A stretch of 64,000 nucleotides of DNA from Octopus bimaculoides. Taxonomy: Eukaryota. Shown here piece after piece: positions 4,561-64,000 of this stretch (its first letter is position 1; the number at the start of each line of letters is the position of its first letter). Location of the stretch: positions 3,739,502-3,803,501 of the forward strand of contig NC_069005.1 in assembly GCF_001194135.2 (NCBI RefSeq), given 5' to 3'. The notes under the pieces were generated by a model. That model saw only the letters and a list, made by a program, of their open reading frames with translations. It was not told the DNA's origin and did not search any database. The translations under genes were made by a program, and so were the position numbers.

Positions 4561-4829
4561 CAAACAACTCTTATCCGACATAACTTAATGGGTCAGCTAG
4601 ACATAACAGTCAAATGCTTCTTCTATTACATCATACTGACTTAAAAAATGAAGGAGACGTTGAGATAATGCTATAGTTCTCTATACATTAAGGACTAGCC
4701 AGAATTAAAAAAAAAAGACGTGATGGTTACGAGTGGAACGTCGTAGATCTTTGTTCGTTTCGATCTGGACTGTACTGGAAACTAACCTTCAACAGTCAAC
4801 GCCGACAAAAAATAAAAAATCACAACCTC

Positions 4830-5470
4830 CACCACAACCACCACTACTACTACTACTACACCACGACCAACACGTGGACGACTACCACCTACTACTACTA
4901 CTACTACTACACCACGACCAACACGACGACCACCACCTACTACTACTACTACCACTAGTATGAATTCTACCACCGCAACTACTACCACTACTACCGGCAC
5001 CAGCAGCACCACCACCAACACCATCACTACTAATACTACTACCACCACCACTACTACTACCGCAACTACTACAACTTCTAATACCGGTACCACCACCACC
5101 ACCACCACTGCTACTACTACTACGACCGCAACTACTACCACCACCAGCACCACAATGACGACGACAGCAAACCACCACGGTAGATGTGGATAATAATACT
5201 ACAAATACCGAAGTTACAGCTGGCATCCGTCACTGGGGGTGTTGACTCTACCATCGCTTCAAAAATAATTAACGCCACCGACACAAAAGCTTGCGGTGCT
5301 GCGGATGGCAGTTGCAGTGTCAGCAGCAGAAGCAGCAGCGGTAGTAGCAGTAGTAGTAGTTCGACTTCCACCTGAAAATCAGCATCCCACGTTCGTTCTC
5401 GCCGCACACCTAGTACGTTGCATTGCAATACATTTCTCCCACAGACGGTAGTTACGCTACCACCACCACC

Positions 5471-5503
<33 letters not shown>

Positions 5504-5790
5504 GCTGCNNNNNNNNNNACCTAGTACGTTGCATTGCAATACATTTCTACCACAGACGGTAGTTACGCTACCACCACCACCACCACCACCACTACTACTA
5601 CTACTACTACTGCTGCTGCTGCTGACGCTGTTACGTTAGATTGTACTATTTCTACTACAACCAAGAACAACTGCAGCAATAACAGTATTATTTAGTAGTA
5701 GTGCTAGCATCATCTCATCGTCACCATCATCATCACCATCATCATCATCATCAGTAGTAGATAGTTGTAGTAATTGTAGTAGTAGTAGTA
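4830..5790. repeat. Compound (CTA/CCA/CAG/CAT/TAG)n trinucleotide low-complexity region
   Basis: Direct reading. Explains the poly-T, poly-V, poly-L and G/S ORFs. Confidence 0.9.
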
Positions 5791-5928
5791 GTTGGTGCTG
5801 TGTCGCTCACAACAAGCGTATTGTTACCATTATCGAAAAGTCAATGATTTTATCACCGAAAGTAGTAGCAGACTTTACCACGTTCTTTCCTACGTTTTAC
5901 AACTTCGCTCATACTCTCCCAACCACAC

Positions 5929-7931: not shown

Positions 7932-8075
7932 ACTTTCAGTTTCCGTCTGCCAAATCCACTCACAAATCTACGGTCGACCTGAGGCTACAGCAGAAGACGC
8001 TTGACCACAACGCCGCGCAATGGGACTCAACCCAGAATCATGTGGTTGGGAAGCGCATTGTCACGCCTGCGCCGT
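7927..8075 (-). mobile_element. SINE family B, 5' part
   Basis: Reverse complement gives gcttcccaaccacatgattctgggttgagtcccattgcg...gtgagtggatttggcagacggaaactgaaag. Confidence 0.8.
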
Positions 8076-8212: not shown

Positions 8213-8425
8213 AAGGCGGCGAGCTAGCAGAATCGTTAGCACGCCGGGCGAAATGCTTACTGATATTTCGTTTGTCTTCATGTTCTGAGTTCAAATTCTG
8301 CCGAGGTCGACTTTGCCTTTTATCCTTTCGGGGGTCGAAACAATTAAGTACCAGTTACGTACTGGAATCGATCTAATCGACCGGTTTCCCTCTCTTAAAA
8401 TTTCGGGCATTGTGCGTTAGAAGAA
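8213..8425 (+). mobile_element. SINE family A, near full-length
   Basis: ggcggcgagctagcagaatcgttagcacgccgggcgaaatgctt (A-box region), ttctgagttcaaattc (B-box), gtcgactttgcctttt...taagtaccagt. Confidence 0.9.
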
Positions 8426-8714: not shown

Positions 8715-8915
8715 ATACTAAGTCAGAAATTTGTGAGGAGGACGTAAATGAATTACATCGACCTCAGTGCTCAACTGGGGAATATTTTCACGACCCCGAA
8801 AGGGAAGAAAGGCGAAGTCAACCTCGGCGGAATTTGAACTCAGGAAGTAAAGGCGGACGGAAGACCGCAACGCATTTTGCCTTGCGTGTTACTGATTTTG
8901 CCAAGCTCACTACCT
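8715..8915 (-). mobile_element. SINE family A
   Basis: cgaccccgaaaggga-gaaaggcgaagtcaacctcggcggaatttgaactcag is the reverse complement of the family A core. Confidence 0.8.
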
Positions 8916-9770
8916 TATGTAAGAAAATATTGATAATAAATCATTGCACCACATTTTCTACAGTCTACTTAAAATAATGCTTTTTTTTTTTTTTCCAAAA
9001 GATGCTGAAACGGGTCTTATAAAACATCATTTCGGTGAAAGGAATCGGGTAGTTACATGCATTGGAACACCGCTATTTTTGATAATGTTATTTATTGTTT
9101 TTCCTACTATAGATCCTAAGAAGAAAAAAAAAACATTTTGGTAAGAGGCGTAAAGCGGATTCTTATTTCTTGCTGCAACCGCTTCGTTTATGCAGCACCT
9201 TTACGTTTTGCGTTCAAAATCTACTGCAGCTAATTTATACACTTGCTTCGGGAATTGATAAAATAAAATATCACTGCGGCTGGTGTCATCAGCTACTTTC
9301 TCTTTGAACAATTTTGGCTTGAATACACTAAAATGTCATAAACGTTAGTCCGTCAGACTAAAAGACAGGAGGTTCAGCCATTTGCTGTGGGTGGGCTTCC
9401 AAAAGCTGACAAATTAAAGACCCATCTAACTACTGCATTTAATATTCTCGACTCTCACTCAACCCCAAAATCTTATGGCCTGATGTTTGCTAGCAACAAA
9501 TATAATCACGATTAACAGAAGCAACCGACTGACACAATCATTAGAGCGCTGGATGACTATACTTGATAAATTTGTTCTGCTGTATATATATATACATTTA
9601 TTTGCATTCTATGTTCAAATCTCTTCGAGGTCTGTGTGCTTTTTTTAAAGCATTTCCATATCGATAGAATAATGTACAAGTCAACTATTAGGGCTTATTT
9701 AATTGACTGTCATTCCAGCACGAAATTTCAAGTTTTAACCTAAAATTGAAACACAAATTAATATAATGTA

Positions 9771-18590: not shown

Positions 18591-18846
18591 TCGATACAGA
18601 TATACAGAGAGAGAGAGAGATTTATGTGTACGAACTTATTCAAATAATTATGTTTTCATGTCCCTATGCATTTATGATCTTTTGAGTGCCTTTAGTGTGG
18701 TTCCCTCCCTTGCAAATACTCTGACAGGATCTTGTGTTCTAATTGTCTTTTTCTCACTTCTATCAACCCATCATGGTGCCCCTTGTCAGACCTCAAGTAT
18801 ACGGCCTGCCCTCCAGACTAAGAATTTAAAATAATAATAATAATAA

Positions 18847-19061
18847 TCCTTTCTAGTAAAGGCACAATGGCAGCAATTTTGGGTGATATGGGCCATTCGA
18901 TTACGTCGACCCTAGTAGTCAAATGGTTCTTAATTTATCGACCCGAAAGGATAAGAGGCAAATTCGATCTCAGCGTAATTTGAACTCAGAACGTAGCGAC
19001 GGGCGAAATATCGCTACGTATTTCATCCAGCGTAGTAACGGTTGAGCTATCTCTCCGCCTT
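18847..19061 (-). mobile_element. SINE family A flanked by (TAA)n on both sides
   Basis: Reverse complement of the family A consensus as seen at 8213. Confidence 0.85.
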
Positions 19062-19079
19062 AATAATAATAGTAATAAT

Positions 19080-19293
19080 ACTTTCTATTATAGGCACAAG
19101 GTCTGAAATTTGGGTGGGGGGATAATTCGTTAACATCGACCCAAGTACTCAACTGGTACTTATTTCATCGACTGTTAAAAGGATGAAAGGCAAACTCGAC
19201 CTCAGCGGAATTTGAACTCGGAACATAGCGACGGGCGAAATAGCACTATGCATTTCGTCCAACGTGCAAACGATTTTGCCAGCACGCCACCTT
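19080..19293 (-). mobile_element. SINE family A, tandem neighbour of 18847-19061, also (TAA)n-flanked
   Basis: ggatgaaaggcaaactcgacctcagcggaatttgaactcgg core. Confidence 0.85.
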
Positions 19294-20075
19294 AAATAAT
19301 AATAATAATATGTAAAAGATCTTAAGAGAGAACATGCAAATTTTCTTCACTATGTAGACGACTGTTACTGTAGCGCGAAGCTTCAGGCTTATTACAGTGA
19401 TTATTTAGACTATATGTGAACAAGATTATGCCTTATTAAGTCCTGGGCTCGGTGATTGAATTTCATGGTCTTCCTCGTAAAAATGTTAATGATGTACCAA
19501 CAATTAGAATGGACATCTCCTACAATAAGGTTTCAGTGTAACCTGTAGGTAGGATCCTCATATCAGCGACTAGAAATATTTGATCCTTGCTCTGTAATAT
19601 GATATTTGGTGAAAATATGTCAAAAATATCAAGATTTGATAGAAATTTAAAGCGTCTCCGCTTCTGGTAGCCTCAGGAGGGGTTTCCACAGTTAACAATA
19701 ATGTAATTTTAAGCGAATATACCTGCTTCTCACCCTCCAAGGGTTAACAGAGTTACGCTGTCAAAAATTATGTAATTGATCACTGCTCACATCAAGCAAC
19801 AGAGAAACAATTGTTCGTCATAATAGGCAAGAGAATCCATCACTTGTGGAGGAATATCTTTCTGGTTCTCGTTGACTTTTGGCAGTTGATCTCAGAGAAA
19901 AAGTTCTAAACTATAGATTAAAGACTATGGGAATGAGAAATTACAAATTTCCGAATCTAGTCATAGAGAAATGTATCCCTAGTAGCAAGACACAGACTAG
20001 GTCGATTCAATTACCTATAGATGATTTTTTTAGCGCATTAAAAATGACAGTTCTTGTCTACCTACCTACCTACAC

Positions 20076-21965: not shown

Positions 21966-22330
21966 TAGGCGTAGCTCTGCGGTAAGAGGCTTGCTTCCCA
22001 ACCATATGGTTCCTCGTTCAGTCCCATTGCGTGGCACCTTGGGCAAGTGTCATCTTCTGCTAAAGCCACGTTCCGACCAAAGCCTTGTGAGTGGATTTGA
22101 TAGAGAGAAACTGAAAGAATCCCGTAATATATATATTTGTGTGTCTGTGTTTCCCCTCCCCATCGTTTGACAACCGATGTCGGTGTGTTCCGCGTAAATT
22201 AGCGTTTCGGCAAAATTTACCAGTAGAATAAGTACTAGGCTTACAAAGAATAAGTCCTGCGGTCGATTTCTTCGACTAAAGCCGGTGCTCCAGCATGACC
22301 GCAGTCTAATGACTGAAACAAATAAAAGTA
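21966..22330 (+). mobile_element. SINE family B, full-length
   Basis: tRNA-like head (gcttcccaaccatatggttcctcgttcagtcccattgcgtggcaccttgggcaagtgtc), internal TA/TG tract, tail gcggtgctccagcatgaccgcagtc...aataaaa. Confidence 0.9.
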
Positions 22331-22634: not shown

Positions 22635-22822
22635 TTACCACGTACAATTTTTTACATTTGACGGATATTTGTCCTCATCTTGTTTGTTGTTAACACAACG
22701 TTTCGGCTGATATACCCTCAAGCCTTCATCAGGTGTCTTGGGGAAATTTCGAACCTGGCCTCTCATTCCTAAGGTATTTTTCGATGTTATTACCATTATT
22801 CAGGTCGCTCGGAATCTTGGAG
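22635..22822 (-). mobile_element. SINE family C (head partly deleted) with hammerhead-containing tail
   Basis: Reverse complement nearly identical to 42600-42760. Confidence 0.85.
22692..22737 (-). ncRNA. Minimal type I hammerhead-ribozyme motif
   Basis: Minus strand reads GACAC-CUGAUGA-A-GGCU-(ugagggtatatc)-AGCC-GAA-AC-GU-U-GUGUU. Stems I and II pair, the core is intact, and stem III is the palindrome ACGU. Confidence 0.65.
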
Positions 22823-23423: not shown

Positions 23424-23950
23424 GAATGACAGAGCAGTGCGTGCCATCGAAGTGACACTTGTGTATAAAATATACGAACCTCAGTATATCCATCATGATT
23501 ACCCGTCTGATAAAGGTACACCGGGCATAAGCTTCACAACAATATGTGCGTGACAGGGTGATCGCACATCAAGATAAACAGCGCAGGACCTTGAAGATGG
23601 AGTCCAGTTAGATTTTTCTTGAGGTCGAGTAACCCATTCTTCCCAAACGGTCCTTGAATAAGGGTTGTTTAAGGATGTTGAACGAATCAGCCATGTTTCC
23701 AGAGGAGAATTATTCAAACATTAAAGTATTTCTCTCAACACATGGATATGATGCTCAGCGAAAAGTTATGCTCGACATGCTTAACTGGTTAAGGTAAAAA
23801 AAAAAAAATGACAAGCAAATCTGTGGTATTGAGCAGAATATTTGCTGTAGACCATCTATTATACCAAGACAAAACAATGTACATGATAACACTTCTAATC
23901 ACTTAAGATCAGAAGCCATGGGAGAGACTGCCTCGTGCTGCATCAGGGAA
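23424..23950. mobile_element. Interspersed repeat family D, copy 1 (class unassigned)
   Basis: Colinear homology with 23970-24417; microsatellite on both sides. Confidence 0.75.
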
Positions 23951-23969
23951 TTTTATTATTATTATTATT

Positions 23970-24417
23970 GAGTGACACTGGGGTAGAATTATACGAATCC
24001 CAATATACCCATTATGACTGCCCGTCTTACAAGGTTACACTAAGCGCATTCATCACGACCATATGTGCACGACATGGTGATCTCATATCAAGATATACAG
24101 TGCAGAACGTTCTGGTGGGGCCCAGTTAGAATTTTGATTAGCCCGATCCGCTCAAAAGGTCCCTGAATAAGGTTTGTTTAAGGATGATGAACAAAACACT
24201 CATGTTTCCACAGGTGAGTGATTCAATCCTCCCCAAATTCCTTTCAACACGATTCTGATGCTCCCCCACGACTTCCGTTCGTGATCAGGGATACACATAT
24301 CGTCAGGAACATGCTCAACTGGTTAATGTCAAGCAACTGAGAAGCAAATCTGTGGTATTGGGTCGAATATTTGCTGTAGACCATCCTTTATACCAAGACA
24401 AAACAATGTACATGATA
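23970..24417. mobile_element. Interspersed repeat family D, copy 2 (lacks ~70 bp at the right end)
   Basis: Shares blocks with copy 1, e.g. agcaaatctgtggtattg...gaatatttgctgtagaccatc...ataccaagacaaaacaatgtacatgata. Confidence 0.75.
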
Positions 24418-24440
24418 TTATTATTATTATTATTATTAAA

Positions 24441-24653
24441 AAGGCAGCGAGCTTGCAGAATCGTTATCAGACCAGGAAAAATGCTTCGCGATATTTTGTA
24501 CGTCCATAAGTTATGAGTTCAAATGTCACCAAGGTCAATTTGCCTTTCATCCTTTCGGGATCGATAAAGTAAGTACCAGTAAAACACTAGGGTCGATAGA
24601 ATCGACTAGTTCCCTCCCCAAAAATTTCAGGCCTTAAGCCTATAATAGAAAGA
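24441..24653 (+). mobile_element. SINE family A embedded in (ATT)n
   Basis: aaggcagcgagcttgcagaatcgtt...gagttcaaat...ttgcctttcatcctttcggga-tcgataa. Confidence 0.9.
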
Positions 24654-24701
<48 letters not shown>

Positions 24702-25210
24702 CAAAAATATTGTTGATTATGACTTCGAGGTTTCGGCAAGCTAAGCCGGTATAGGTTTAGTGGCAGTCAGTTATTCAAAATTAAATAAAATGTTCATATC
24801 AGTGTTTATTCAAACGACCTGTCTTCAAGCCATTGCTACAGAATGGCCATAAAATAAACTGGAAAAATCTGTGAAATCGTAATAGTATAAACATATGTTC
24901 GATCGAATTGTTCTCGAACATTTATATTCCTAAAATTGTTTACCATTCCTGTAGAGTGCTGCCCTCGGGTGTTCATTATTAATTTTTGACATTGGAACAG
25001 GACCAAAAGTTTTTAATATATAAAAGTGGGGTATTTCGTTTTGCAACGTAAAACTGTACACTCAACGACATAAGCTCTACGTTTTCTATTCAACTTCTTA
25101 CCATATTAGGCAATATTTGAGATAGCTATATTGTGTATGCTAACACATCCGTCTGCAATAATACAGGTCGACTTACCCGAATTTTAATTGCTGTACAAAC
25201 AAGACAGTTA

Positions 25211-25426
25211 ATCCTCTCTAATCTAGGTACAACGCCCGAAATTTTGGGGGAGGGGGCCAGTCGATTAGATCCACCCAGTAAGCCACTGGTACTTAATTCA
25301 TCGACCCCGAAAGGTTGAAAGGCAAAGTCGACCGCGGCAGAATTTGAACTCAGAACATAAAGACATACGTAATACTGCAAAGCATTGCGCCCGGCATGCT
25401 AACGCTTCTGCCAGCTCGACGCCTTA
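25211..25426 (-). mobile_element. SINE family A, well preserved
   Basis: Reverse complement of family A over its whole length. Confidence 0.9.
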
Positions 25427-26259
25427 AAGCAACACAGTAATTGCAGCCGTCAACATCATAGGCAGTAATGTCTAATTCGTAATATCAAACATCATATGAA
25501 TGGTATATTACCCCAGCCACCCCGCCATGAGAACTTGTAAGGAAATATGGTATACGAACCAGCCTTTTATCAAATATATCCTTGTTTATAGGAAATGACG
25601 AAATGTATAGGCATTTTCCGATCAGAAACCAAAAAAAAAATAAGTTAAACAAAAAAACTCCAAATAAAACTGAGCAAAAACATTGTGTCTTTTTTTTTCT
25701 TTCATTTCTATAACTCCTCCCATACTCTTGAGTCTCTGTTATTGGTCAACTGAGGTAGGATATTGTGGCCATCTCTGTCGCGCTAAATAAGAGATTATAA
25801 CGGATGATATATTTTGGCGACTTCCGCAGTCTAATCTTTATCAAAACAACTATTGCATAATTTGAGGTAGAAATTACGAATATAGCTGAATGTATTAAAT
25901 ATTGAACATTACTTCTACGTAGTGCTGCAGCTCGTAACTCCCCCTCCCTGTCCCTCTCCCTTCTCCTCCTCAGTTTCTATGATTCTTTCTCTCTCCACAA
26001 TGTTTACATACAGCATCCCTTTACTCATTGTCTGGTAACGTACTAGTTCTCTCACACTGCATCTGTCAGGGTTAACTCTCTTTGCACTTCTATTTGCTTC
26101 TCTCTCCTCTCTCTATACGATGGAAGACTTGTAGGGAGAAAGTAACCAAACAACATGTATATCAGCTAATCGTTGTAATGAGATGTATGTATAATAGACA
26201 CACAAACACTGTCATATGTGTTATGTATACCACGCGCATGTATACATACAAACAATCTT

Positions 26260-26345: not shown

Positions 26346-26493
26346 GGTGCAGGAGTGAGTGTGTGGTAAAAAATTTGCTTCCCAACCACATGATTCCAAG
26401 TGGCAACTTAGGCAAGAGTCTTCTAATGTTGCCTCGGGTCGACCACACCCTCTTGAGTGGATTTGGTAGACGGAAACTGAAAGAATCCCATCG

Positions 26494-26529
<36 letters not shown>

Positions 26530-26705: not shown

Positions 26706-28499
26706 TAGTGACTAAAACAAGACAGATAAGAGGCGTGTGTGTGTTTGTGTGTGTAAAAGTTCAGTCTATTCTCCCGTTGCCTAGTCTTGCAGCTATAAAA
26801 CCGAACACGTCACAATATTCTTCTGTTCAGAGTAAAATAACGTTATTCATTTTATATCCGGGAATGACTCATTTTCTTCAACAATACTCTTGGGAAATAT
26901 TTGCGAACGTTTTTGCTGCTATCATTGTTTCGGCAGCTGCTGTATGTGTTATGTATGCTCGTGGTGACCCTGATTGACGAAAGCCTTTAATCTGAGGGCA
27001 TGCTGGTAGTCGACTAAACGTTTTAAGAAGCATCCGCAAGTACACAATTTTTCCGATGTGAAGCCTTTTAGAATCTGGTACTGGAGAACTAAGTAATGCA
27101 GACACGGCCTTGGTGATGGTGGCTGCGATCACCAAAAGTAGGGGCCTCGATGCACAGCCAATTTTCCCAGGGTCCGCTCTCATGATTCGTGCTTCGCTTG
27201 AGTGTGGTTTGCCTCGAAAGCGATATAGAAAAATATAGATAGATAGTTTTATATATTTATATATATATATATATATATATATACATCGATATGTTGTACT
27301 TATTTCCTTGACGCTAGAACGGAGTCGAGCCGAGCAGATTTGAAAATCTGATGTCGGTTGCCACAAACACAATGAAAGAAGAAACACTAATTTTCTTTTA
27401 CATTGTACGAAAATTTTCTACTAACACACAGCCCTTATGAGGAGCGACATATATAGCGTATAACATTGATTTTAATTCTAGCTTGTGGTATCATATATAA
27501 GCTTATCACATTCGAATCTTGAATCCGATAATGATAATGTGCTATTTGATAAAAGTAATAGAGTAATATAGTTAAAATGGATTGACAAATATCTGATAAA
27601 AAAGTTAGATTGGATAAAATCTGATGAAAATAATCGTAAAATCGTAGAAAAATAATATGTGACGAAATGATTAAAAAATATCTGATTTGAATAAAAAAAA
27701 ATGATTGTGTATTATGTATGAAAAAAAAAATATTCAGAAATATGCAGTAAATGTTGTTGAGTAATGTGACACAAAAAGAAAAATGATCGGCAAAAACATG
27801 TCACAAAAAGGATATTGTAATAGATGCTAAAATGGAATAGATGTATACGTGTTCAAAAGGATTCCTACATATGTGTTTAATATGATTGCGTGTTGACATG
27901 AATAGAATATATGATGAGTAAGATGCATCTCCACTGTACGTATTATGGAATGCCAATAATACACACACATGTGTGTGTGTATATATATATATATATATAA
28001 ATAATGTGCGTGTGTGTGTTTTGCTGGTCATACGTGTGCGTTTAATTTACATTATGTTTGCGGGTAATGTATATTTCCATTTAAAAATTATGCAACTCTT
28101 TTTCAGCTCCCATTGCTGGAAAAAAATACTTAGCAATTTTTAGACTGTAAAGGAAAGCACTCTGCTGGAAACACTGGCATGCGCATACAAATCTCATAGG
28201 TGAATTAAAACTCAGAGTTACTCATATGCAGAATTAGGAGGAACTACTGAAGCTCTTGTAAATCCATTAGAATACGTCCCACTTGCCGTCTCTTATCAAC
28301 CATAGACATCTTGAACTGGTCTTAACTGCCGTGCCTACTTTCAGTTGTCTTGGTTCCACTAACTATTTTTTGCGGTGTAGCCCGAAGACTTTCCTTGATA
28401 AGAGAGTCCGCGACTAAATTCTGATCTTTGGTTTTTTGTTTTTTGTTTTTTTTTTACCGGGTAGGAAATATTGAATAAACGAACGTTGGTTTAAGGGGT

Positions 28500-30000
28500 G
28501 AATAACTTATCGAATGTCCTTTCTTGTTTATGAAGCCTCGTGTCTTTGTGCTCCTATTATGATCTTCCTTTGTGATGTTTGGTTTACGTTCACGATTAAG
28601 ATAATTACCAGCGAAAAGCTGCAGACTTTCCTTTAGCAATAATTCTTTTCAGTTTAAGAGGTGACGGTCGAACTTAGGTTGTCTCATCAGAATTATTCGT
28701 TTGTTGTTTCTCTAACAGCATAGTCACTTCGTTAGACAAACTTTCTCTCTGGGACACTAGCAACTCATTCACGTCAACCTCCATGACTTTTTCAAATCCT
28801 ACATCCTGTTCAAGTGTTACAATATCTATCCGACTTTATGTAGACCTTCTGCTTGAGAAAAACTCGTAATATCTCGAACAGGATCTGGTCATATACTTTT
28901 CGAAGCATTATTCAATGTTGACTATTCATGACTCATCTATATTACGCCCAGCATCCGTTATGTTGACTTTATCCCAGTCGTCTCTGACTGTAAGTCTATC
29001 CTCCCTATCAATTGCTTTCATGGGTTGTTTTGAATGTTCTCATATGATATGCCTTCAAAGTAGCTATCTCACCTTAATCCATTGGCTGGAGAAAAGAAGT
29101 TGTATTCGTTAAGTTATATTCTACTCTCCCTTATTAGAAAGGTCGATGGGTTGCTCGGTGCATTGTCTAAAAGTAACTCTGCTTCTTTGGCAATATTATA
29201 TCTGGTATTGTACAACAGAGCAAAAAATGTTTTTAAATCACTTTTTTAATATGTTCTTAGTCATTCAGGACTTCTTATTTAAATGCGTGATCACTAAACT
29301 TTCTTTAACTATTGTAAGCTCGTTCATTTTCGTACTGGTACATGCTTGAACTTCATATCATCAGCGCCATTTCCTCCAAAATGAAGAGTCAGACGATTTT
29401 GAAATTCTTTATTCCCTGGTGTTCCTTTTACCGCTGTAGAAAGAAAAGTTCTAGCCGATACGCACATCCAGGAAATGCATTCTCATCAACATTGTATACT
29501 TGATCTGGTTCGTAACCCCCTTCAGCAATCATTTTCCTCAACTGCTCCGGATAATTAGTGACCGCCCCTGAATCAGTGCTAGCAGTTTCTGTATTCGTTT
29601 CTATGTGGTGAAATTTTTCAAACTAGCCGTTACTAGCTAAAAGAATATATATTTTTAAAAAAATTAGTAGTCTTACCTTCCTATTTTCTGTCTTGTTTGA
29701 ATTACGGTAGCGTTTATCGGCACATTACGCCAGTTCTGTTCCTCGACCCATACACTCAAAAGTCATTCTAGTTTAAGAATTACATTTAGAACAATCAAGA
29801 CAAAAGGTCCGTACAGTTAACGGAGGAGTTTCGTGAGTACTTGGCATAATTTCCTCTTTCTTGTCACGTATTTGTCCCACTGTAAACGTTGCAAGATTTA
29901 AAGCTTTGTCTATCTTAGTTTTACTTCCGCATCATGTATTTTTATAACGTCAAGTATCCAGTGCAACTTCTTTACGGTCTCTTTACGCACTACTGCCTCT
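28500..30000 (-). pseudogene. Fossil Tigger/pogo-family (TIGD1/CENP-B-like, DDE_1) transposase, near full-length, with stops and frameshifts
   Basis: Colinear minus-strand motifs: LDVIKIHDAE (HTH), NLATFTVGQIRDKKEEI, LLSVWVEEQNWRNVPI (CENP-B-type HTH), FLASNG*FEKF, ASTDSGAVTNYPEQLRKMIAEGGYEPDQVYNVDE, LLLDNAPSNP, NTTSFLQPMD*GEIATLKAYHMRTF, VRDDWDKVNITDA, DVNELLVSQRESLSNE. TIRs not found. Confidence 0.85.
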
Positions 30001-30974
30001 AGTTTTGCTTGATAGCTTCTTTTCAGGCATCTTAAATTGAAGGCAAATCCATCAGCACCAGGGATTAATAATCTACAACAAATATGTAGTAAAAAAATAA
30101 TTGGCCCAGTAAAGATTTGATTTGTGAGAGCAGAGAATTGTCTGATACTCATGGATGCAATAATGAAAATCAGATGAAAAAGTGATTGAGGAAGAGAAAA
30201 TACTACGCTATTACAGTTAACTGAACGATCACTACATTTTATTAGCAATTCACCCTTTGTTTTTCTGACCAAATACACTTCCTCACACACACTTTCATAC
30301 ACATAGACAGATATACTAATCCACACTCGTGTTGGCGTACTTGCTTATACCACTTGCAGTCAGATGGATTCTAAATTTGGTGGGACAGTTGTGTCGATTA
30401 CGTGGATTGGTTTAGATATTAGCAATGGTGGGCGTGTATTGTTGGTGGAATGGTAGTCATACTGTTCATCTTTCTAATTGTATTGTTGTGGGTGTTTGGT
30501 CTAAAATCAATCCTCGTAGACCTATGATCAAAGAAATTTCATTCAGCATTTAAAATACAGAGGATACCACAGTTTATATTTTCATTTGAAATGGATTTGC
30601 TTATCTACTTCATACTACATAATTCTGTTTTCTCTTCTCGGTTTTGTTGGTGTTGTTGATAGAAAGACAAAAGCAAACATGTCTGCACGCATAAACACTC
30701 ACACACACACACAAACACACAAACGCAGCGTCAGTAAATCATAAATTTGAAAGTGAAATACACTCTAAATATTCAAGTGTTGGATACGTTCCTAGAAGTA
30801 CTCCAATATATCACATTCGCTGCTTATGGTTACCTGCCGCAATACGAGATTCCGTAAGAGCGAAATTATGAATTGTGGCCTGAAATTAACGGTCATTCAT
30901 TAATATCCATAGGCGCGAAAACCCGTAACCTAACGGATAATCGTAATACAAGGGATACATGTGTATGTCTGTAT

Positions 30975-42564: not shown

Positions 42565-42605
<41 letters not shown>

Positions 42606-42775
42606 TCGAAAAATACTTTAGGAATGAAAACCCAGGTTCGAAATTTCCCCAAGACACCTGATGAAGGCTGGAGGGTATATCAACCGAAAGGTTGTGTTAA
42701 CAACAAACAAGATGAATGCAAATATCCGTCAAATGTAAATAATGTACATAACACCTCATCTCTTAGAGAACTGAA
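42495..42775 (+). mobile_element. SINE family C, full-length: tRNA-like head, internal (AAT)n, hammerhead-like tail
   Basis: A-box-like tggggtaattg, anticodon-arm-like gggctactaacc, B-box gagttcgattcc (42544-42555), tail homologous to 22635-22800. Confidence 0.85.
42653..42698 (+). ncRNA. Hammerhead motif, mutated copy (probably inactive)
   Basis: GACAC-CUGAUGA-A-GGCUG..CAACC-GAAAG-GUU-GUGUU. Stem II has a mismatch and a C15.2>G change breaks the ACGU palindrome. Confidence 0.5.
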
Positions 42776-45335: not shown

Positions 45336-45394
45336 TATATATGTGTGTGTGTGTGTTTCTGTGTTTGTGTAAATATGTTTGTGTAAATATGTTC

Positions 45395-45600
45395 GTATGT
45401 CTCGGTTTGTCCCCCTACTTTCGCTTGACAACTGATGTTGGTGTGTTTACGTCCCCATTACTTAACAGTTCGGCAGAATTGTCGATAGTATAAGTACAAG
45501 ACTTACAAAGAATAAGTCCTGGGGTCGATTTGTTCAACCAAAAGGTAGTGCTCCAGCACAGCCGCGCTCAAATGACTGATGAAAATGAAAGAGCAAAAGA
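45395..45600 (+). mobile_element. SINE family B, 3' half
   Basis: cgcttgacaactgatgttggtgtgtttacgtcccc...ataagtac...aataagtcctggggtcgattt...gtgctccagca. Confidence 0.85.
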
Positions 45601-46233: not shown

Positions 46234-46560
46234 AGGCGCAGGAGTAGCTTGCTTTGCAACCACATGGTTCTGGGTTCAGTCCCACTGCGTGGCACCCTGG
46301 GCAAGCGTCTTCTTCTATAGTTCGGGCCGACCAAAGCCTGAGTGGATTTGATAGACAGAAACTGAAAGAATATATATATANNNNNNNNNNNNNNNNNNNN
46401 NNNNNNNNNNNNNNNNNNNNNNNNNNNNNNNNNNNNNNNNNNNNNNNNNNNNNNNNNNNNCCCCCCCCCCTCAATACTTGACAACCGATGTTGTATTTAC
46501 GTCTCCGTTAGCTAGTGGTTCGGCAAAAGGAAGCGATAGAATAAGTACTGGGGACATATT
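46234..46560 (+). mobile_element. SINE family B spanning the gap at 46381-46460
   Basis: caaccacatggttctgggttcagtcccactgcgtggcaccctgggcaag head; ttgacaaccgatgttg tail. Confidence 0.85.
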
Positions 46561-51153: not shown

Positions 51154-51983
51154 AAGGAGGTGAGCTAGCAGAAACATTAGTGCGTCCAACAAAATGCTTA
51201 GTCGCATATTTTGCTACATTACGTACTGAGATTAAACGCCACCAAGTTCATTATTTTTTATTTTCATCAATTGGGGATAGACGAAAGAAGTACCTGTTGA
51301 TAACAAAGATTGTTGTAGTTTAGTACCGACTATCAAACCAGTTCAGGTCTTGTGTCTATACCATAAAAAGGATTATTGTTATTAAGGTGCCGTGTCGGTA
51401 GAATAAATAGCAAAACGGACAAAATGCTTATCAATGTCAATGAAATAAGAACGCGTTGAGACTAGAGTCGATGCAATCGACTTAGCCAGCAAATTCGAGA
51501 AAGTGGGATTGTGCTAAGATTTGAAACCGTTATCAATGTAATTACATGGCGGCGAGCTGGTAGAATCGTTAGCATGGTGGGCAAAGCGCTTAGCAGTATT
51601 TCGTCCATTTTTAAGTTCTGAGTTCAAATAACGCGGAGTTCGATCTTGCCTTTCATCCTCTCTGGATCGATGATATAAACACCAGTTGTGGTCAATGTAA
51701 CCGACTGGGCCCCTCCCGCCAAATTTCTGGCCTTGTTCTTATTGTAGATCGGACTAATAATGCAGGTGTTAAGGCGGCGAGCTAGCAGAATCCTTAAAAT
51801 GCCAGAAAATATGCTTAACGATATTTACTTCAACTTTACTCTCCGAGCTCAGTTTGCGCCACGGTCGGCTGTGTCTTTTCACCCCTTTCGCGGTCGATGA
51901 AATAAGCACCACTTAAGCACCGGAGTCAATGTTATCGACGAGCACATCCCGATATTTCAAACCTCGTTCCTATTTTAGAAATG
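51154..51983 (+). mobile_element. Four head-to-tail SINE family A copies (~51154-51371, 51384-51530, 51548-51750, 51771-51983)
   Basis: Each starts (a)agg(c/t)gg(c/t)gagct(a/g)g(c/t)agaa-like; copy 2 is internally deleted. Confidence 0.8.
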
Positions 51984-52004
51984 ATTATTACTCTAGTCAT
52001 TGTT

Positions 52005-53321: not shown

Positions 53322-53650
53322 AGCAGGCGTGACCCTGTGGTGAGAAGCTTACTTCCCAACCACATGGTTCCAGGTTCAATCCCACTGCATGGCACCTTGG
53401 GCAAGTGCCGTCTACCATAACCTTTGATCATGTATATATTTATGTGTGTCTCATTGTGTCTGTGTTTTCCCTTCTCCCACATCGTTTGAGAACCGATGTC
53501 GGTGTGTTTATGTGCCCATAGTGGTTCGGCAGTAAAGGCTGATAGAATAAGAACCAGGCTTAGAAAGTATAAGTCCAAAGATCGGTATCTTCGACTAAAA
53601 AGCGGTGCTATATCATGGGCCCTAGGCAAATGATTCAATCAAGTAAAAGA
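53322..53650 (+). mobile_element. SINE family B, full-length
   Basis: gcaggcgtgaccctgtggtgagaagcttacttcccaaccacatggttccaggttcaatcccactgcatggcaccttgggcaagtg...cgactaaaaagcggtgct. Confidence 0.9.
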
Positions 53651-62199: not shown

Positions 62200-62365
62200 G
62201 ATTTCAAATTTCGGCTGGGTTTTGGATAGTTCGATCACATCGATTCCAGTTTCCAACAATTACTTATTTTATTGACCTCGAACGGATGAAAGCTGCAGTC
62301 GACTTCGGCAACATTCTAATTCAGATATTAATGGCGGACGAAATGCCGTTAAGTATATTTTATGT
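62200..62365 (-). mobile_element. SINE family A, degenerate
   Basis: gacctcgaacggatgaaagctgcagtcgacttcggc...gacgaaatgccgttaag is the reverse complement of the family A core. Confidence 0.65.
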
Positions 62366-62953
62366 AACCCCAACTGGTACACACTCTTATGACGTACAAG
62401 TCATTAACAAACACATTAGTCGTTCAAATGCATTCACTTTCGTTAAATTCGAATATATTTCTGGAAATTATTCGATTACTATAGAAGAAATCAATCAAGG
62501 TTTACCAGATTCTGAAATGGTTGACAAAATTACAGTAGTAATTGAGATAAAAATATTTTTCTCGAAAACGCTTCGTGAAAAAAGTATATCAATGAAGGAA
62601 AGATAAAAATAACTTACAAACTGAAGTAACAGACAGAAAAAGTTAATCTGATGCAAACTAGGGAAAAATTAAGAAAGAAAAGACCAATATGACGTACAAT
62701 AGAAAAATACCAATCTCAGTATCAAGTAATTAAACGACTACTTTTAAATAAAACATGCAATAGGAAATTTAAGTCAAGCCTTTGAACCTACATGCCACGA
62801 GAAACCAATAAAAGATCGTTACATATATAATCAATATTCTTCCTAACAACGCCATGACAACCTCAAACATCAATAAAATAAATACAAACAATAGTCTTAC
62901 ATACTCTCAGCAAGACAGCAAGAATTTCCAAATTACATTGTACAAACCGTACC

Positions 62954-64000
62954 TATGGCTTGGAATAAATATTTGCGGCTTTGGGCACGTTTTTGCGGCG
63001 CTAGGCATGCTCGCCGGGTACAGATATACGTTGGAGCTTATTTTTGTCGCCATTGTTTCGTACTTACGTGTTCAGGTTTGTTGTTTCAGCCCCAAGTACG
63101 TTCTTATGGCAACAGTAACGCACATACTGCCTCCGTTTCGTATAAACGGGCAACGGTTAGTATTTACGGTTTGGAATAAGTAGTCGCGGCTTCGGGCACG
63201 TTTTTGCGCCGCCAGGCACGCTGTTGCGTCGGCGGCTACAGATTTACGTTGTGAAATTTAATTTTGTTGCCATTGTTTCGTACTTACGTGTTCAGGTCTG
63301 TTGTTACAGCCGCAAGTAGGTACTTAAAGCAGCAGCGACTTACATAATGCCGCAGTTCCGTATAAACGGGCATCGGCTGGTATTTATGGCTTGGAATAAA
63401 TATTTGCGGCTCTGGGCACGTTTTTCCGCCACTAGGCACACTGTTACGTCGGCGGCTACAGATTTACGTTGTGGAGCTTAATTTTTGTCGCCATTGTTTC
63501 GTACTTACGTGTTCAGGTTTGTTGTTTCAGCCCCAAGTACGTTCTTATGGCAACAGCAACGCACATACTACCTCAGTTTCGTATAAACGGGCAACGGTTA
63601 GTATTTACGGCTTGGAATACGTAGTCGCGACTTCGGGCACGTTTTTGCGCCGCCAGGCACGCTGTTGCGTCGGCGGGTACAGATATACGTTGTGAAGTTT
63701 AATTTTGTTGCCATTGTTTCGTACTTACGTGTTCAGGTTTGTTGTTACATCCGCAAGTACGTACTTATAGCAGCAGCGACTTACATAATGACGCAGTTCC
63801 GTATAAACGGGCATCGGCTAGTATTTATGGCTTGGAATAAATATTTGCGGCTTTGGGCACGTTTTTCCGCCACTATGCACGCTGTTGCGTCGGCGGCTAC
63901 AGATTTACGTTGTGGAGCTTAATTTTTGTCGCCATTGTTTCGTACTTACGTGTTCAGATTTGTTGTTACATCCGCAAGTACGTACTTATAGCAGCAGCGA
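62954..64000. repeat. Tandem satellite, 220/221-bp monomers forming a 441-bp A/B dimer; continues past the window end
   Basis: Anchor cattgtttcgtacttacgtgttcag starts at 63051, 63271, 63492, 63712 and 63933 (spacings 220, 221, 220, 221). Confidence 0.97.

What the first reader, a model, noticed from the sequence alone, without database searches (positions are those of the whole stretch)
62954..64000. CpG-rich satellite with dimeric higher-order structure
Monomers alternate between type A (ttgtttcagccccaagtacgttcttatggcaacag...) and type B (ttgttaca(g/t)ccgcaagta(c/g)gtactta(t/a)agcagcagcg...). Copies 441 bp apart are far more alike than adjacent monomers. The edge monomer is decayed (deletion near 63010), as expected at an array boundary. 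Higher-order repeats of roughly nucleosome-scale monomers typify centromeric and pericentromeric DNA (established). Cephalopod centromere sequences are, to my knowledge, poorly characterised, so this is a candidate (inference).
Basis: partly seen in the sequence, partly recalled or inferred. Interest (0 to 1): 0.7.

Follow-up and report, generated by a model that had tools for sequence, protein, structure and literature searches.

The report
Tandem 220-bp repeat with dimer period
The last kilobase of the window is a real, non-coding tandem repeat of 220-bp units arranged as 441-bp pairs, an ordinary kind of satellite DNA, and nothing available here shows whether it lies at a centromere.

Summary
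From 62949/62954 to the window end there are 4.8 head-to-tail copies of a 220/221-bp unit. Units 441 bp apart are 89-95% identical, against 80-84% for neighbours. 22 alignment columns show a strict A-B-A-B pattern, 0 show AABB and 2 show ABBA. The edge unit carries 7-bp and 2-bp deletions. GC is 47% against 35.5% outside, and CpG density is 2.8 times higher.

There are three corrections:
- The fifth unit is a chimera. Its 5' part is type A and its last 42 bp are identical to the preceding type-B unit. The switch lies inside the 27-bp block that is invariant in all units, so the order of 3' blocks is A,B,A,B,B.
- GpC is enriched exactly as much as CpG (both 1.53), and the flanks show no CpG depletion (0.94). 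"CpG-rich" therefore describes base clustering, not CpG protection.
- The left boundary is sharp. No decayed units lie upstream, and no other copy lies in the other 63 kb.

The array is not coding, not an RNA gene array, has no internal sub-repeats and no dyad symmetry. Its CENP-B-box-like match is at chance level. Every external search returned nothing, but the collections hold essentially no animal genomes. Copy number, chromosomal position and the cephalopod origin are therefore untested. The centromere idea is neither supported nor refuted, and its prior is low.

The parts
62949..63159 (+). Unit m0, the edge unit. Type A, 211 bp, with a 7-bp deletion at about 63011 and a 2-bp deletion. It is 89-90% identical to m2.
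63160..63379 (+). Unit m1. Type B, 220 bp, 20 CpG. It is 94.5% identical to m3 and 84% to its neighbours.
63380..63600 (+). Unit m2. Type A, 221 bp, 15 CpG. Together with m1 it forms one 441-bp dimer.
63601..63820 (+). Unit m3. Type B, 220 bp, 22 CpG.
63821..64000 (+). Unit m4, cut by the window end (180 bp). It is a chimera. It is type A up to 63930 (96.4% identical to m2) and type B from 63968 (42 of 42 identical to m3). The switch falls inside the invariant block.
63269..63295 (+). One copy of the 27-bp block GCCATTGTTTCGTACTTACGTGTTCAG. It is invariant in all five units and is the likely crossover or mis-threading point.
62400..62948 (.). Left flank. It is AT-rich unique sequence with no homology to the unit, so the boundary is sharp. 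A weak fragment of a dispersed repeat lies at 62224-62325.

Best explanation
This is the left edge of a non-coding satellite-type tandem array, and I think it continues past the window end.

Shown:
- A unit of about 220 bp is present in two diverged forms, A and B, that differ at about 16-20% of positions.
- The A+B pair of 441 bp is the unit that was amplified most recently.
- Homogeneity rises from the edge inwards: 89%, then 94.5%, then 96.4% between successive same-type units.
- The last visible unit is an A/B recombinant whose breakpoint lies in the longest block shared by all units.

Inferred:
- The array grew and is kept partly uniform by unequal crossing-over and gene conversion between out-of-register units. 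This is concerted evolution, weakest at the array edge.
- The array has no sequence-specific function. At most it acts as repetitive DNA that can seed compact chromatin.

Its chromosomal position (centromeric, pericentromeric, subtelomeric or interstitial) and its copy number are unknown.
For: - Tandem structure and both periods are clear.
- The column pattern is 22 ABAB, 0 AABB and 2 ABBA.
- Same-type identity rises inwards: 0.887, 0.945, 0.964.
- The recombinant unit switches inside the 27-bp invariant block, and its 3' part is 42 of 42 identical to the neighbouring unit.
- No reading frame stays open through one 441-bp dimer in any of six frames. The longest stop-free stretch in the array is 109 codons.
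- There is no Rfam family or tRNA.
- There is no protein relative for two translated phases.
- The composition step at the boundary is abrupt, from GC 0.31 to 0.49.
Against: - Only 4.8 units are visible, and the identity gradient rests on three comparisons.
- The source is a gap-ridden short-read scaffold with 12 N runs. The chimeric unit could be an assembler mis-thread through the 27-bp shared block rather than a biological crossover.
- Long homogeneous arrays usually do not assemble from short reads. A cleanly assembled kilobase may therefore mean a short, old, low-copy array.
- There is no second copy in 63 kb.
- No copy-number information of any kind is available.
Confidence: 0.5

Rival explanations
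1. It is a short tandem array carried inside, or generated by, a dispersed mobile element. In oysters, satellite-like repeats are carried by Helentron or MITE-type elements (this comparison is from my own knowledge). Alternatively it is an isolated local tandem duplication of low copy number. In this reading it has no chromosomal role.
For: - The left boundary is sharp and no decayed units lie upstream.
- Same-type copies are 4-11% diverged, which is old for an actively homogenised satellite.
- The array assembled cleanly in a short-read scaffold.
- The surroundings are ordinary SINE-, transposon- and microsatellite-rich DNA.
Against: - No transposon protein domain or terminal structure was recognised in the 4 kb to the left.
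- No second copy lies in the window, although other dispersed families occur 6-8 times in it.
- Homogeneity increases inwards.
Confidence: 0.3
2. It is the first reader's candidate: the centromeric or pericentromeric satellite of this genome. In this reading it is packaged in CENP-A or flanking heterochromatin, and the dimeric higher-order repeat is a product of centromere-style homogenisation.
For: - The unit is roughly nucleosome-scale, the array has a higher-order period, and the edge is more decayed.
- No competing centromere sequence for cephalopods was found in the held literature.
Against: - Higher-order periods and decayed edges occur in non-centromeric satellites as well (established knowledge). 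Animal genomes hold tens to hundreds of satellite families, of which few are centromeric, so the prior is low.
- The dimers are only 89-96% alike.
- The adjoining 63 kb shows no other satellite or pericentromere-like repeat build-up.
- The CENP-B-box-like motif has one mismatch, occurs in type B only, and the window-wide count of 4 compares with 3.3 expected.
- There is no dyad-symmetry excess, with z between -0.75 and +0.76.
Confidence: 0.08
3. It is a sub-repeat block of another specialised region whose core lies beyond the window end. Candidates are ribosomal DNA intergenic-spacer sub-repeats and a subtelomeric repeat.
For: The repeat is richer in G+C and CpG than its surroundings and has a period of about 220 bp, as many spacer and subtelomeric repeats do (established knowledge). 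The right flank is unseen.
Against: - There is no rRNA or other RNA family anywhere in the window.
- There is no telomeric TTAGGG run.
- The left flank is ordinary dispersed-repeat DNA.
Confidence: 0.05
4. It is partly an assembly artefact. In this reading a single A+B pair, or a collapsed larger array, was mis-threaded by a short-read assembler. The number and order of units, including the chimera, would then not be real.
For: - There are 12 N gaps in 64 kb, most next to repeats.
- The chimera's breakpoint coincides with the longest exact shared block, and its 3' part is 100% identical to the neighbouring unit.
Against: - Same-type units differ at 4-11% of positions with private variants. They are therefore distinct sequences, not one unit printed repeatedly.
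- There are no Ns inside the array.
Confidence: 0.05
5. It is a tandem array of protein-coding repeats (441 bp = 147 codons) or of small RNA genes.
For: The dimer length is divisible by three.
Against: - Stops occur in all six frames within every dimer.
- The edge-unit indels are 7 bp and 2 bp.
- There were no protein relatives in 5.8 billion and 1.84 billion sequence libraries.
- There is no Pfam hit nearby.
- There is no Rfam or tRNA hit.
Confidence: 0.01

Closest known systems
Satellite DNA with dimeric higher-order repeats, for example dimeric alpha-satellite arrays of primates and dimeric satellites in many animals and plants
   Same: It shares the head-to-tail units of roughly nucleosomal length. 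Two diverged unit types alternate, and the pair is the homogenised unit. Edge units are more diverged, and there is a recombinant unit with its breakpoint in a conserved block.
   Different: - Only 2.4 dimers are seen.
- Dimers are 89-96% alike rather than over 95-98%.
- There is no sequence similarity to any described family that I could search.
- No evidence exists on array size, copy number or centromere association.
Scattered short satellite-like arrays of bivalve molluscs, many carried by Helentron or MITE-type elements (from my own knowledge of the oyster literature, not re-read here)
   Same: It sits in what may be a mollusc-type genome. The array is short as assembled and is embedded in transposon-rich euchromatin-like DNA with a sharp boundary.
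   Different: No transposon end or protein was recognised at the left flank. No further copies lie in 63 kb. The right flank is unseen.
CENP-B-box-bearing centromeric satellites
   Same: Type-B units contain TTCCGTATAAACGGG, which is one mismatch from the core TTCG-N4-A-N2-CGGG.
   Different: The match is imperfect and absent from type-A units. The window-wide count is what shuffles give: 4 observed against 3.3 expected, and 43 of 100 shuffles reach 4. CENP-B itself is a mammalian protein.

Membership tests
Satellite DNA (tandem repeat family) | Head-to-tail tandem copies of one unit, far beyond chance | tested here: met
   TRF scores are 1495 (period 220) and 1792 (period 441). There are five units in register.
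Satellite DNA (tandem repeat family) | Non-coding unit that is not a gene array | tested here: met
   Stops occur in all frames. There are no protein relatives and no Rfam or tRNA hit.
Satellite DNA (tandem repeat family) | Long arrays and high genomic copy number | not testable with these tools
   The array runs off the window end. No reads and no assembly of the source are available. DNA and protein look-ups were empty in collections that lack animal genomes.
Higher-order repeat organisation | Units one higher-order period apart are much more alike than adjacent units | tested here: met
   Identity is 0.89-0.945 (0.964 for the non-chimeric part) against 0.80-0.84. There are 22 ABAB columns against 0 AABB and 2 ABBA.
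Higher-order repeat organisation | Regular repetition of the same unit order over many periods, with near-identical higher-order copies | tested here: inconclusive
   Only 2.4 periods are visible. The fifth unit breaks the order as an A/B chimera, and copies are 89-96% alike.
Centromeric satellite | Association with CENP-A chromatin or the primary constriction | not testable with these tools
   This needs FISH, or CENP-A ChIP or CUT&RUN.
Centromeric satellite | One major array per chromosome at a consistent position | not testable with these tools
   No chromosome-scale assembly of the source is available here.
Centromeric satellite | Auxiliary sequence marks seen in some centromeres: a CENP-B box or dyad symmetry. 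These are not defining outside certain clades. | tested here: not met
   The CENP-B-like match has one mismatch and is at chance frequency. DNA folding z-scores are -0.75, +0.76 and -0.27.
Transposon-borne tandem array | Array flanked by transposon ends or genes, with many dispersed short copies | tested here: inconclusive
   The left flank has no Pfam domain, no inverted repeat and no other copy in 63 kb. The right flank and the rest of the genome are unseen.
Small-RNA gene array or rDNA spacer | Unit contains, or adjoins, an rRNA, tRNA or snRNA gene | tested here: not met
   Rfam in E-value mode over 61.5-64 kb gave only chance-level hits (E of 1 or more). Gathering mode over the whole window gave none, and ARAGORN gave none. 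Downstream sequence is unseen.
CpG island | G+C of at least 50% and CpG o/e above 0.6 over more than 200 bp, standing out from a CpG-depleted background | tested here: not met
   GC is 0.467. The background is not CpG-depleted (o/e 0.94). GpC is enriched as much as CpG, at 1.53 each.

The most novel reading that the evidence does not exclude
The 220/441-bp repeat is the major centromeric or pericentromeric satellite of a cephalopod. It would be the first sequence-level description of a centromere repeat in that group, and it would give a probe for karyotyping and for locating centromeres in chromosome-scale assemblies.
Probability: 0.07. Interest if true: 0.6.

Novelty: new member of a known kind. 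Interest (0 to 1): 0.22.

Why it matters
As it stands this is an ordinary piece of repetitive DNA. It matters mostly for assembly and repeat annotation, because the array is probably under-represented or mis-ordered in a short-read scaffold.

It would matter more if copy-number and cytological data showed that it is a major satellite. The literature I could search describes no centromere or satellite sequence for cephalopods, whose karyotypes and chromosome numbers are still debated. The Sepia genome paper, PMC13218726, itself calls for labelled centromeric or telomeric probes. A validated chromosome-landmark repeat would then be a useful tool. The evidence in hand does not justify that expectation.

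Tried and rejected
- **Protein route to other arrays.** I translated satellite ORFs to pull related arrays out of public assemblies. The 85-aa phase had no word-sharing candidate. The 109-aa phase gave 0 hits against 1.84 billion representatives. The junction ORF is not on record.
- **DNA patterns.** Exact and degenerate patterns from two conserved blocks gave 0 matches in metagenome, prokaryote-genome and viral contigs. These collections are essentially uninformative for an animal repeat.
- **Organism identification.**
  - A stitched pogo/Tigger pseudo-protein gave only one distant hit, from an ENA metagenome.
  - A SINE-derived peptide gave nothing.
  - Full-text searches with satellite and SINE k-mers gave only chance primer matches or nothing.
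- **RNA gene array.** This is rejected.
- **Coding repeat.** This is rejected.
- **Structure within the unit.** There are no sub-repeats within the unit and no decayed units upstream.
- **Dyad symmetry or non-B DNA.** There is no excess over shuffles.
- **CENP-B box.** The match is at chance level.
- **Telomeric repeats.** None were found.
- **CpG-decay signature.** It is weak. 16 of 50 variable columns fall in the 50 CpG columns, against 34 in the other 171.

Full report
**What is there**

The sequence from about 62949 to the window end is a tandem array.
- Tandem Repeats Finder reports 62954-63998 with period 220 (4.8 copies, 84% matches, score 1495) and period 441 (2.4 copies, 92% matches, score 1792).
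- An independent repeat finder places unit starts at 62949, 63160, 63380, 63601 and 63821.
- I call these units m0 to m4. m0 is 211 bp, m1 to m3 are 220, 221 and 220 bp, and m4 is cut by the window end at 180 bp.

**The dimeric structure is real**

- Units 441 bp apart are 0.89-0.90 (m0-m2), 0.945 (m1-m3) and 0.93 (m2-m4) identical. Neighbours are 0.80, 0.84 and 0.84 identical.
- Among the four complete units, 22 alignment columns have the strict pattern m0=m2≠m1=m3. None has m0=m1≠m2=m3, and two have m0=m3≠m1=m2.
- The edge unit has a 7-bp deletion at 63011 and a 2-bp deletion, and it is the most diverged same-type copy.

**Three corrections**

1. The alternation does not hold to the end.
   - m4 follows type A at all nine diagnostic columns up to 63930 and type B at all six from 63968.
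   - Its last 42 bp are identical to m3, against 83% to m2.
   - The switch lies within GCCATTGTTTCGTACTTACGTGTTCAG, the 27-bp block that is invariant in all five units.
   - This is what an unequal crossover or gene conversion between out-of-register units would leave.
   - It is also what a short-read assembler would produce by threading through the longest shared block. The window has 12 runs of N, so I cannot decide between the two.
2. "CpG-rich" is true as a density: 87 CpG in 1052 bp against 1742 in 58,847 bp, with o/e 1.53 against 0.94.
   - However, GpC is enriched to exactly the same degree (1.53), and the flanks are not CpG-depleted.
   - The figure therefore reflects G+C clustering within one unit copied five times, not protection of CpG.
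   - Variable columns are only mildly concentrated at CpG positions: 16 of 50 CpG columns vary, against 34 of 171 others.
3. The left boundary is sharp. The 550 bp upstream align to the repeat no better than shuffles do, with a score of 21 against a shuffle mean of 19 and maximum of 31. GC steps from 0.31 to 0.49.

**What it is not**

- **Not coding.** No frame is open through a 441-bp dimer. The longest stop-free stretch inside the array is 109 codons. Two translated phases have no relative in libraries of 5.8 billion and 1.84 billion proteins.
- **Not an RNA gene array.** Rfam gives nothing at gathering thresholds over the whole window and only chance-level matches (E of 1 or more) in the array. 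ARAGORN finds no tRNA.
- **No internal sub-repeats**.
- **No dyad symmetry.** Folding energy does not exceed that of dinucleotide shuffles, with z of -0.75, +0.76 and -0.27.
- **No meaningful CENP-B box.** Type-B units contain TTCCGTATAAACGGG, one mismatch from the CENP-B box core. The window holds 4 such near-matches against 3.3 expected, and 43 of 100 shuffles reach 4.
- **No telomeric repeats**.

**Context**

- The repeat has no other copy in the remaining 63 kb.
- That DNA is AT-rich (GC 0.355), full of microsatellites and assembly gaps, and carries dispersed elements:
  - A tRNA-type SINE-like family has six copies.
  - A second family of about 230 bp often occurs in pairs.
  - A dead pogo/Tigger-type transposon lies at about 28.4-30.3 kb on the minus strand. 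Its stitched translation matches a protein with the DDE_1 and HTH_Tnp_Tc5 domains at E = 1.6e-16.
- ORFs next to the array have no Pfam domain.
- Nothing here looks like a pericentromeric build-up of satellites, but 63 kb on one side is a small sample.

**Outside evidence**

- Every attempt to find the repeat elsewhere was empty: protein-level look-ups and DNA patterns in metagenome, prokaryote-genome and viral contigs.
- These collections contain essentially no animal genomes. The silence therefore says nothing about copy number.
- I could not confirm the organism. From memory, the SINE resembles the abundant octopus SINE. That is a lead, not a result.
- The held literature has no description of a cephalopod satellite or centromere sequence.
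- The 2026 Sepia genome paper only points to FISH with centromeric or telomeric probes as something that could help (PMC13218726).

**Most likely explanation**

- The shown facts are the two unit types, the amplified pair, the inward rise of same-type identity (0.887, 0.945, 0.964) and the recombinant unit.
- From these I infer the standard life history of a satellite array. A unit duplicated and the two copies diverged. The pair was then amplified and is partly homogenised by unequal exchange and conversion, least efficiently at the edge.
- I think it somewhat more likely than not that the array continues beyond the window (confidence about 0.5).
- The main rival is a short array, either carried by a transposon or purely local (about 0.3).
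- A centromeric or pericentromeric role has a low prior and no specific support (about 0.08).
- A spacer or subtelomeric block (about 0.05) and a partly artefactual assembly (about 0.05) remain possible.
- A coding or RNA-gene array is effectively excluded.

**Verdict**

This is a real but ordinary feature: a new member of a well-known kind. It would become interesting only if read depth, a long-read assembly, FISH or CENP-A profiling showed that it is a major chromosomal landmark.

Noticed in passing
window 28400-30350, minus strand: A dead pogo/Tigger-type DNA transposon with many stops and frameshifts. Its stitched translation matches a 338-aa protein carrying the DDE_1 (PF03184) and HTH_Tnp_Tc5 (PF03221) domains at E = 1.6e-16, 30% identity and 75% coverage. 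Pfam on single fragments did not reach threshold.
   Followed up: partly
window 7933-8054(-), 21967-22328, 26400-26522, 45384-45591, 46247-46380, 53325-53649: A tRNA-type SINE-like family with a B-box-like GGTTCAGTCCC. Copies are 74-83% alike, and several end in (TA)n next to assembly gaps. From memory it resembles the abundant octopus SINE. This was not verified.
   Followed up: partly
window 8213-8413, 8722-8929, 18830-19310, 24422-24672, 25209-25428, 51548-51990; weak fragment 62224-62325: A second dispersed family of about 220-250 bp that begins with (AAT)n. It often occurs as adjacent pairs; TRF period 232, 2.1 copies and 77% matches at 18830-19310. It is unrelated to the satellite unit.
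   Followed up: partly
window 22642-22800 and 42590-42747: A 159-bp inverted pair at 90.6% identity, 20 kb apart. It was not classified.
   Followed up: no
window 23451-23888 and 23971-24417: A direct repeat of about 440 bp at 71% identity, nearly adjacent. It may be another old tandem duplication.
   Followed up: no
window 4821-5800: A block rich in (ACC)n and (ACT)n trinucleotide runs. It includes a 111-bp unit present twice at 98% identity (5408-5619), interrupted by a 10-N gap.
   Followed up: no
whole window: There are 12 runs of N (10-998 bp), most of them next to (TA)n or (CA)n microsatellites. This marks a short-read scaffold in which repeats are probably collapsed.
   Followed up: yes
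whole window outside the array: There is no CpG depletion, with CpG o/e 0.94 and GpC o/e 1.06 at GC 0.355. This stretch is therefore not under strong germline methylation decay.
   Followed up: partly
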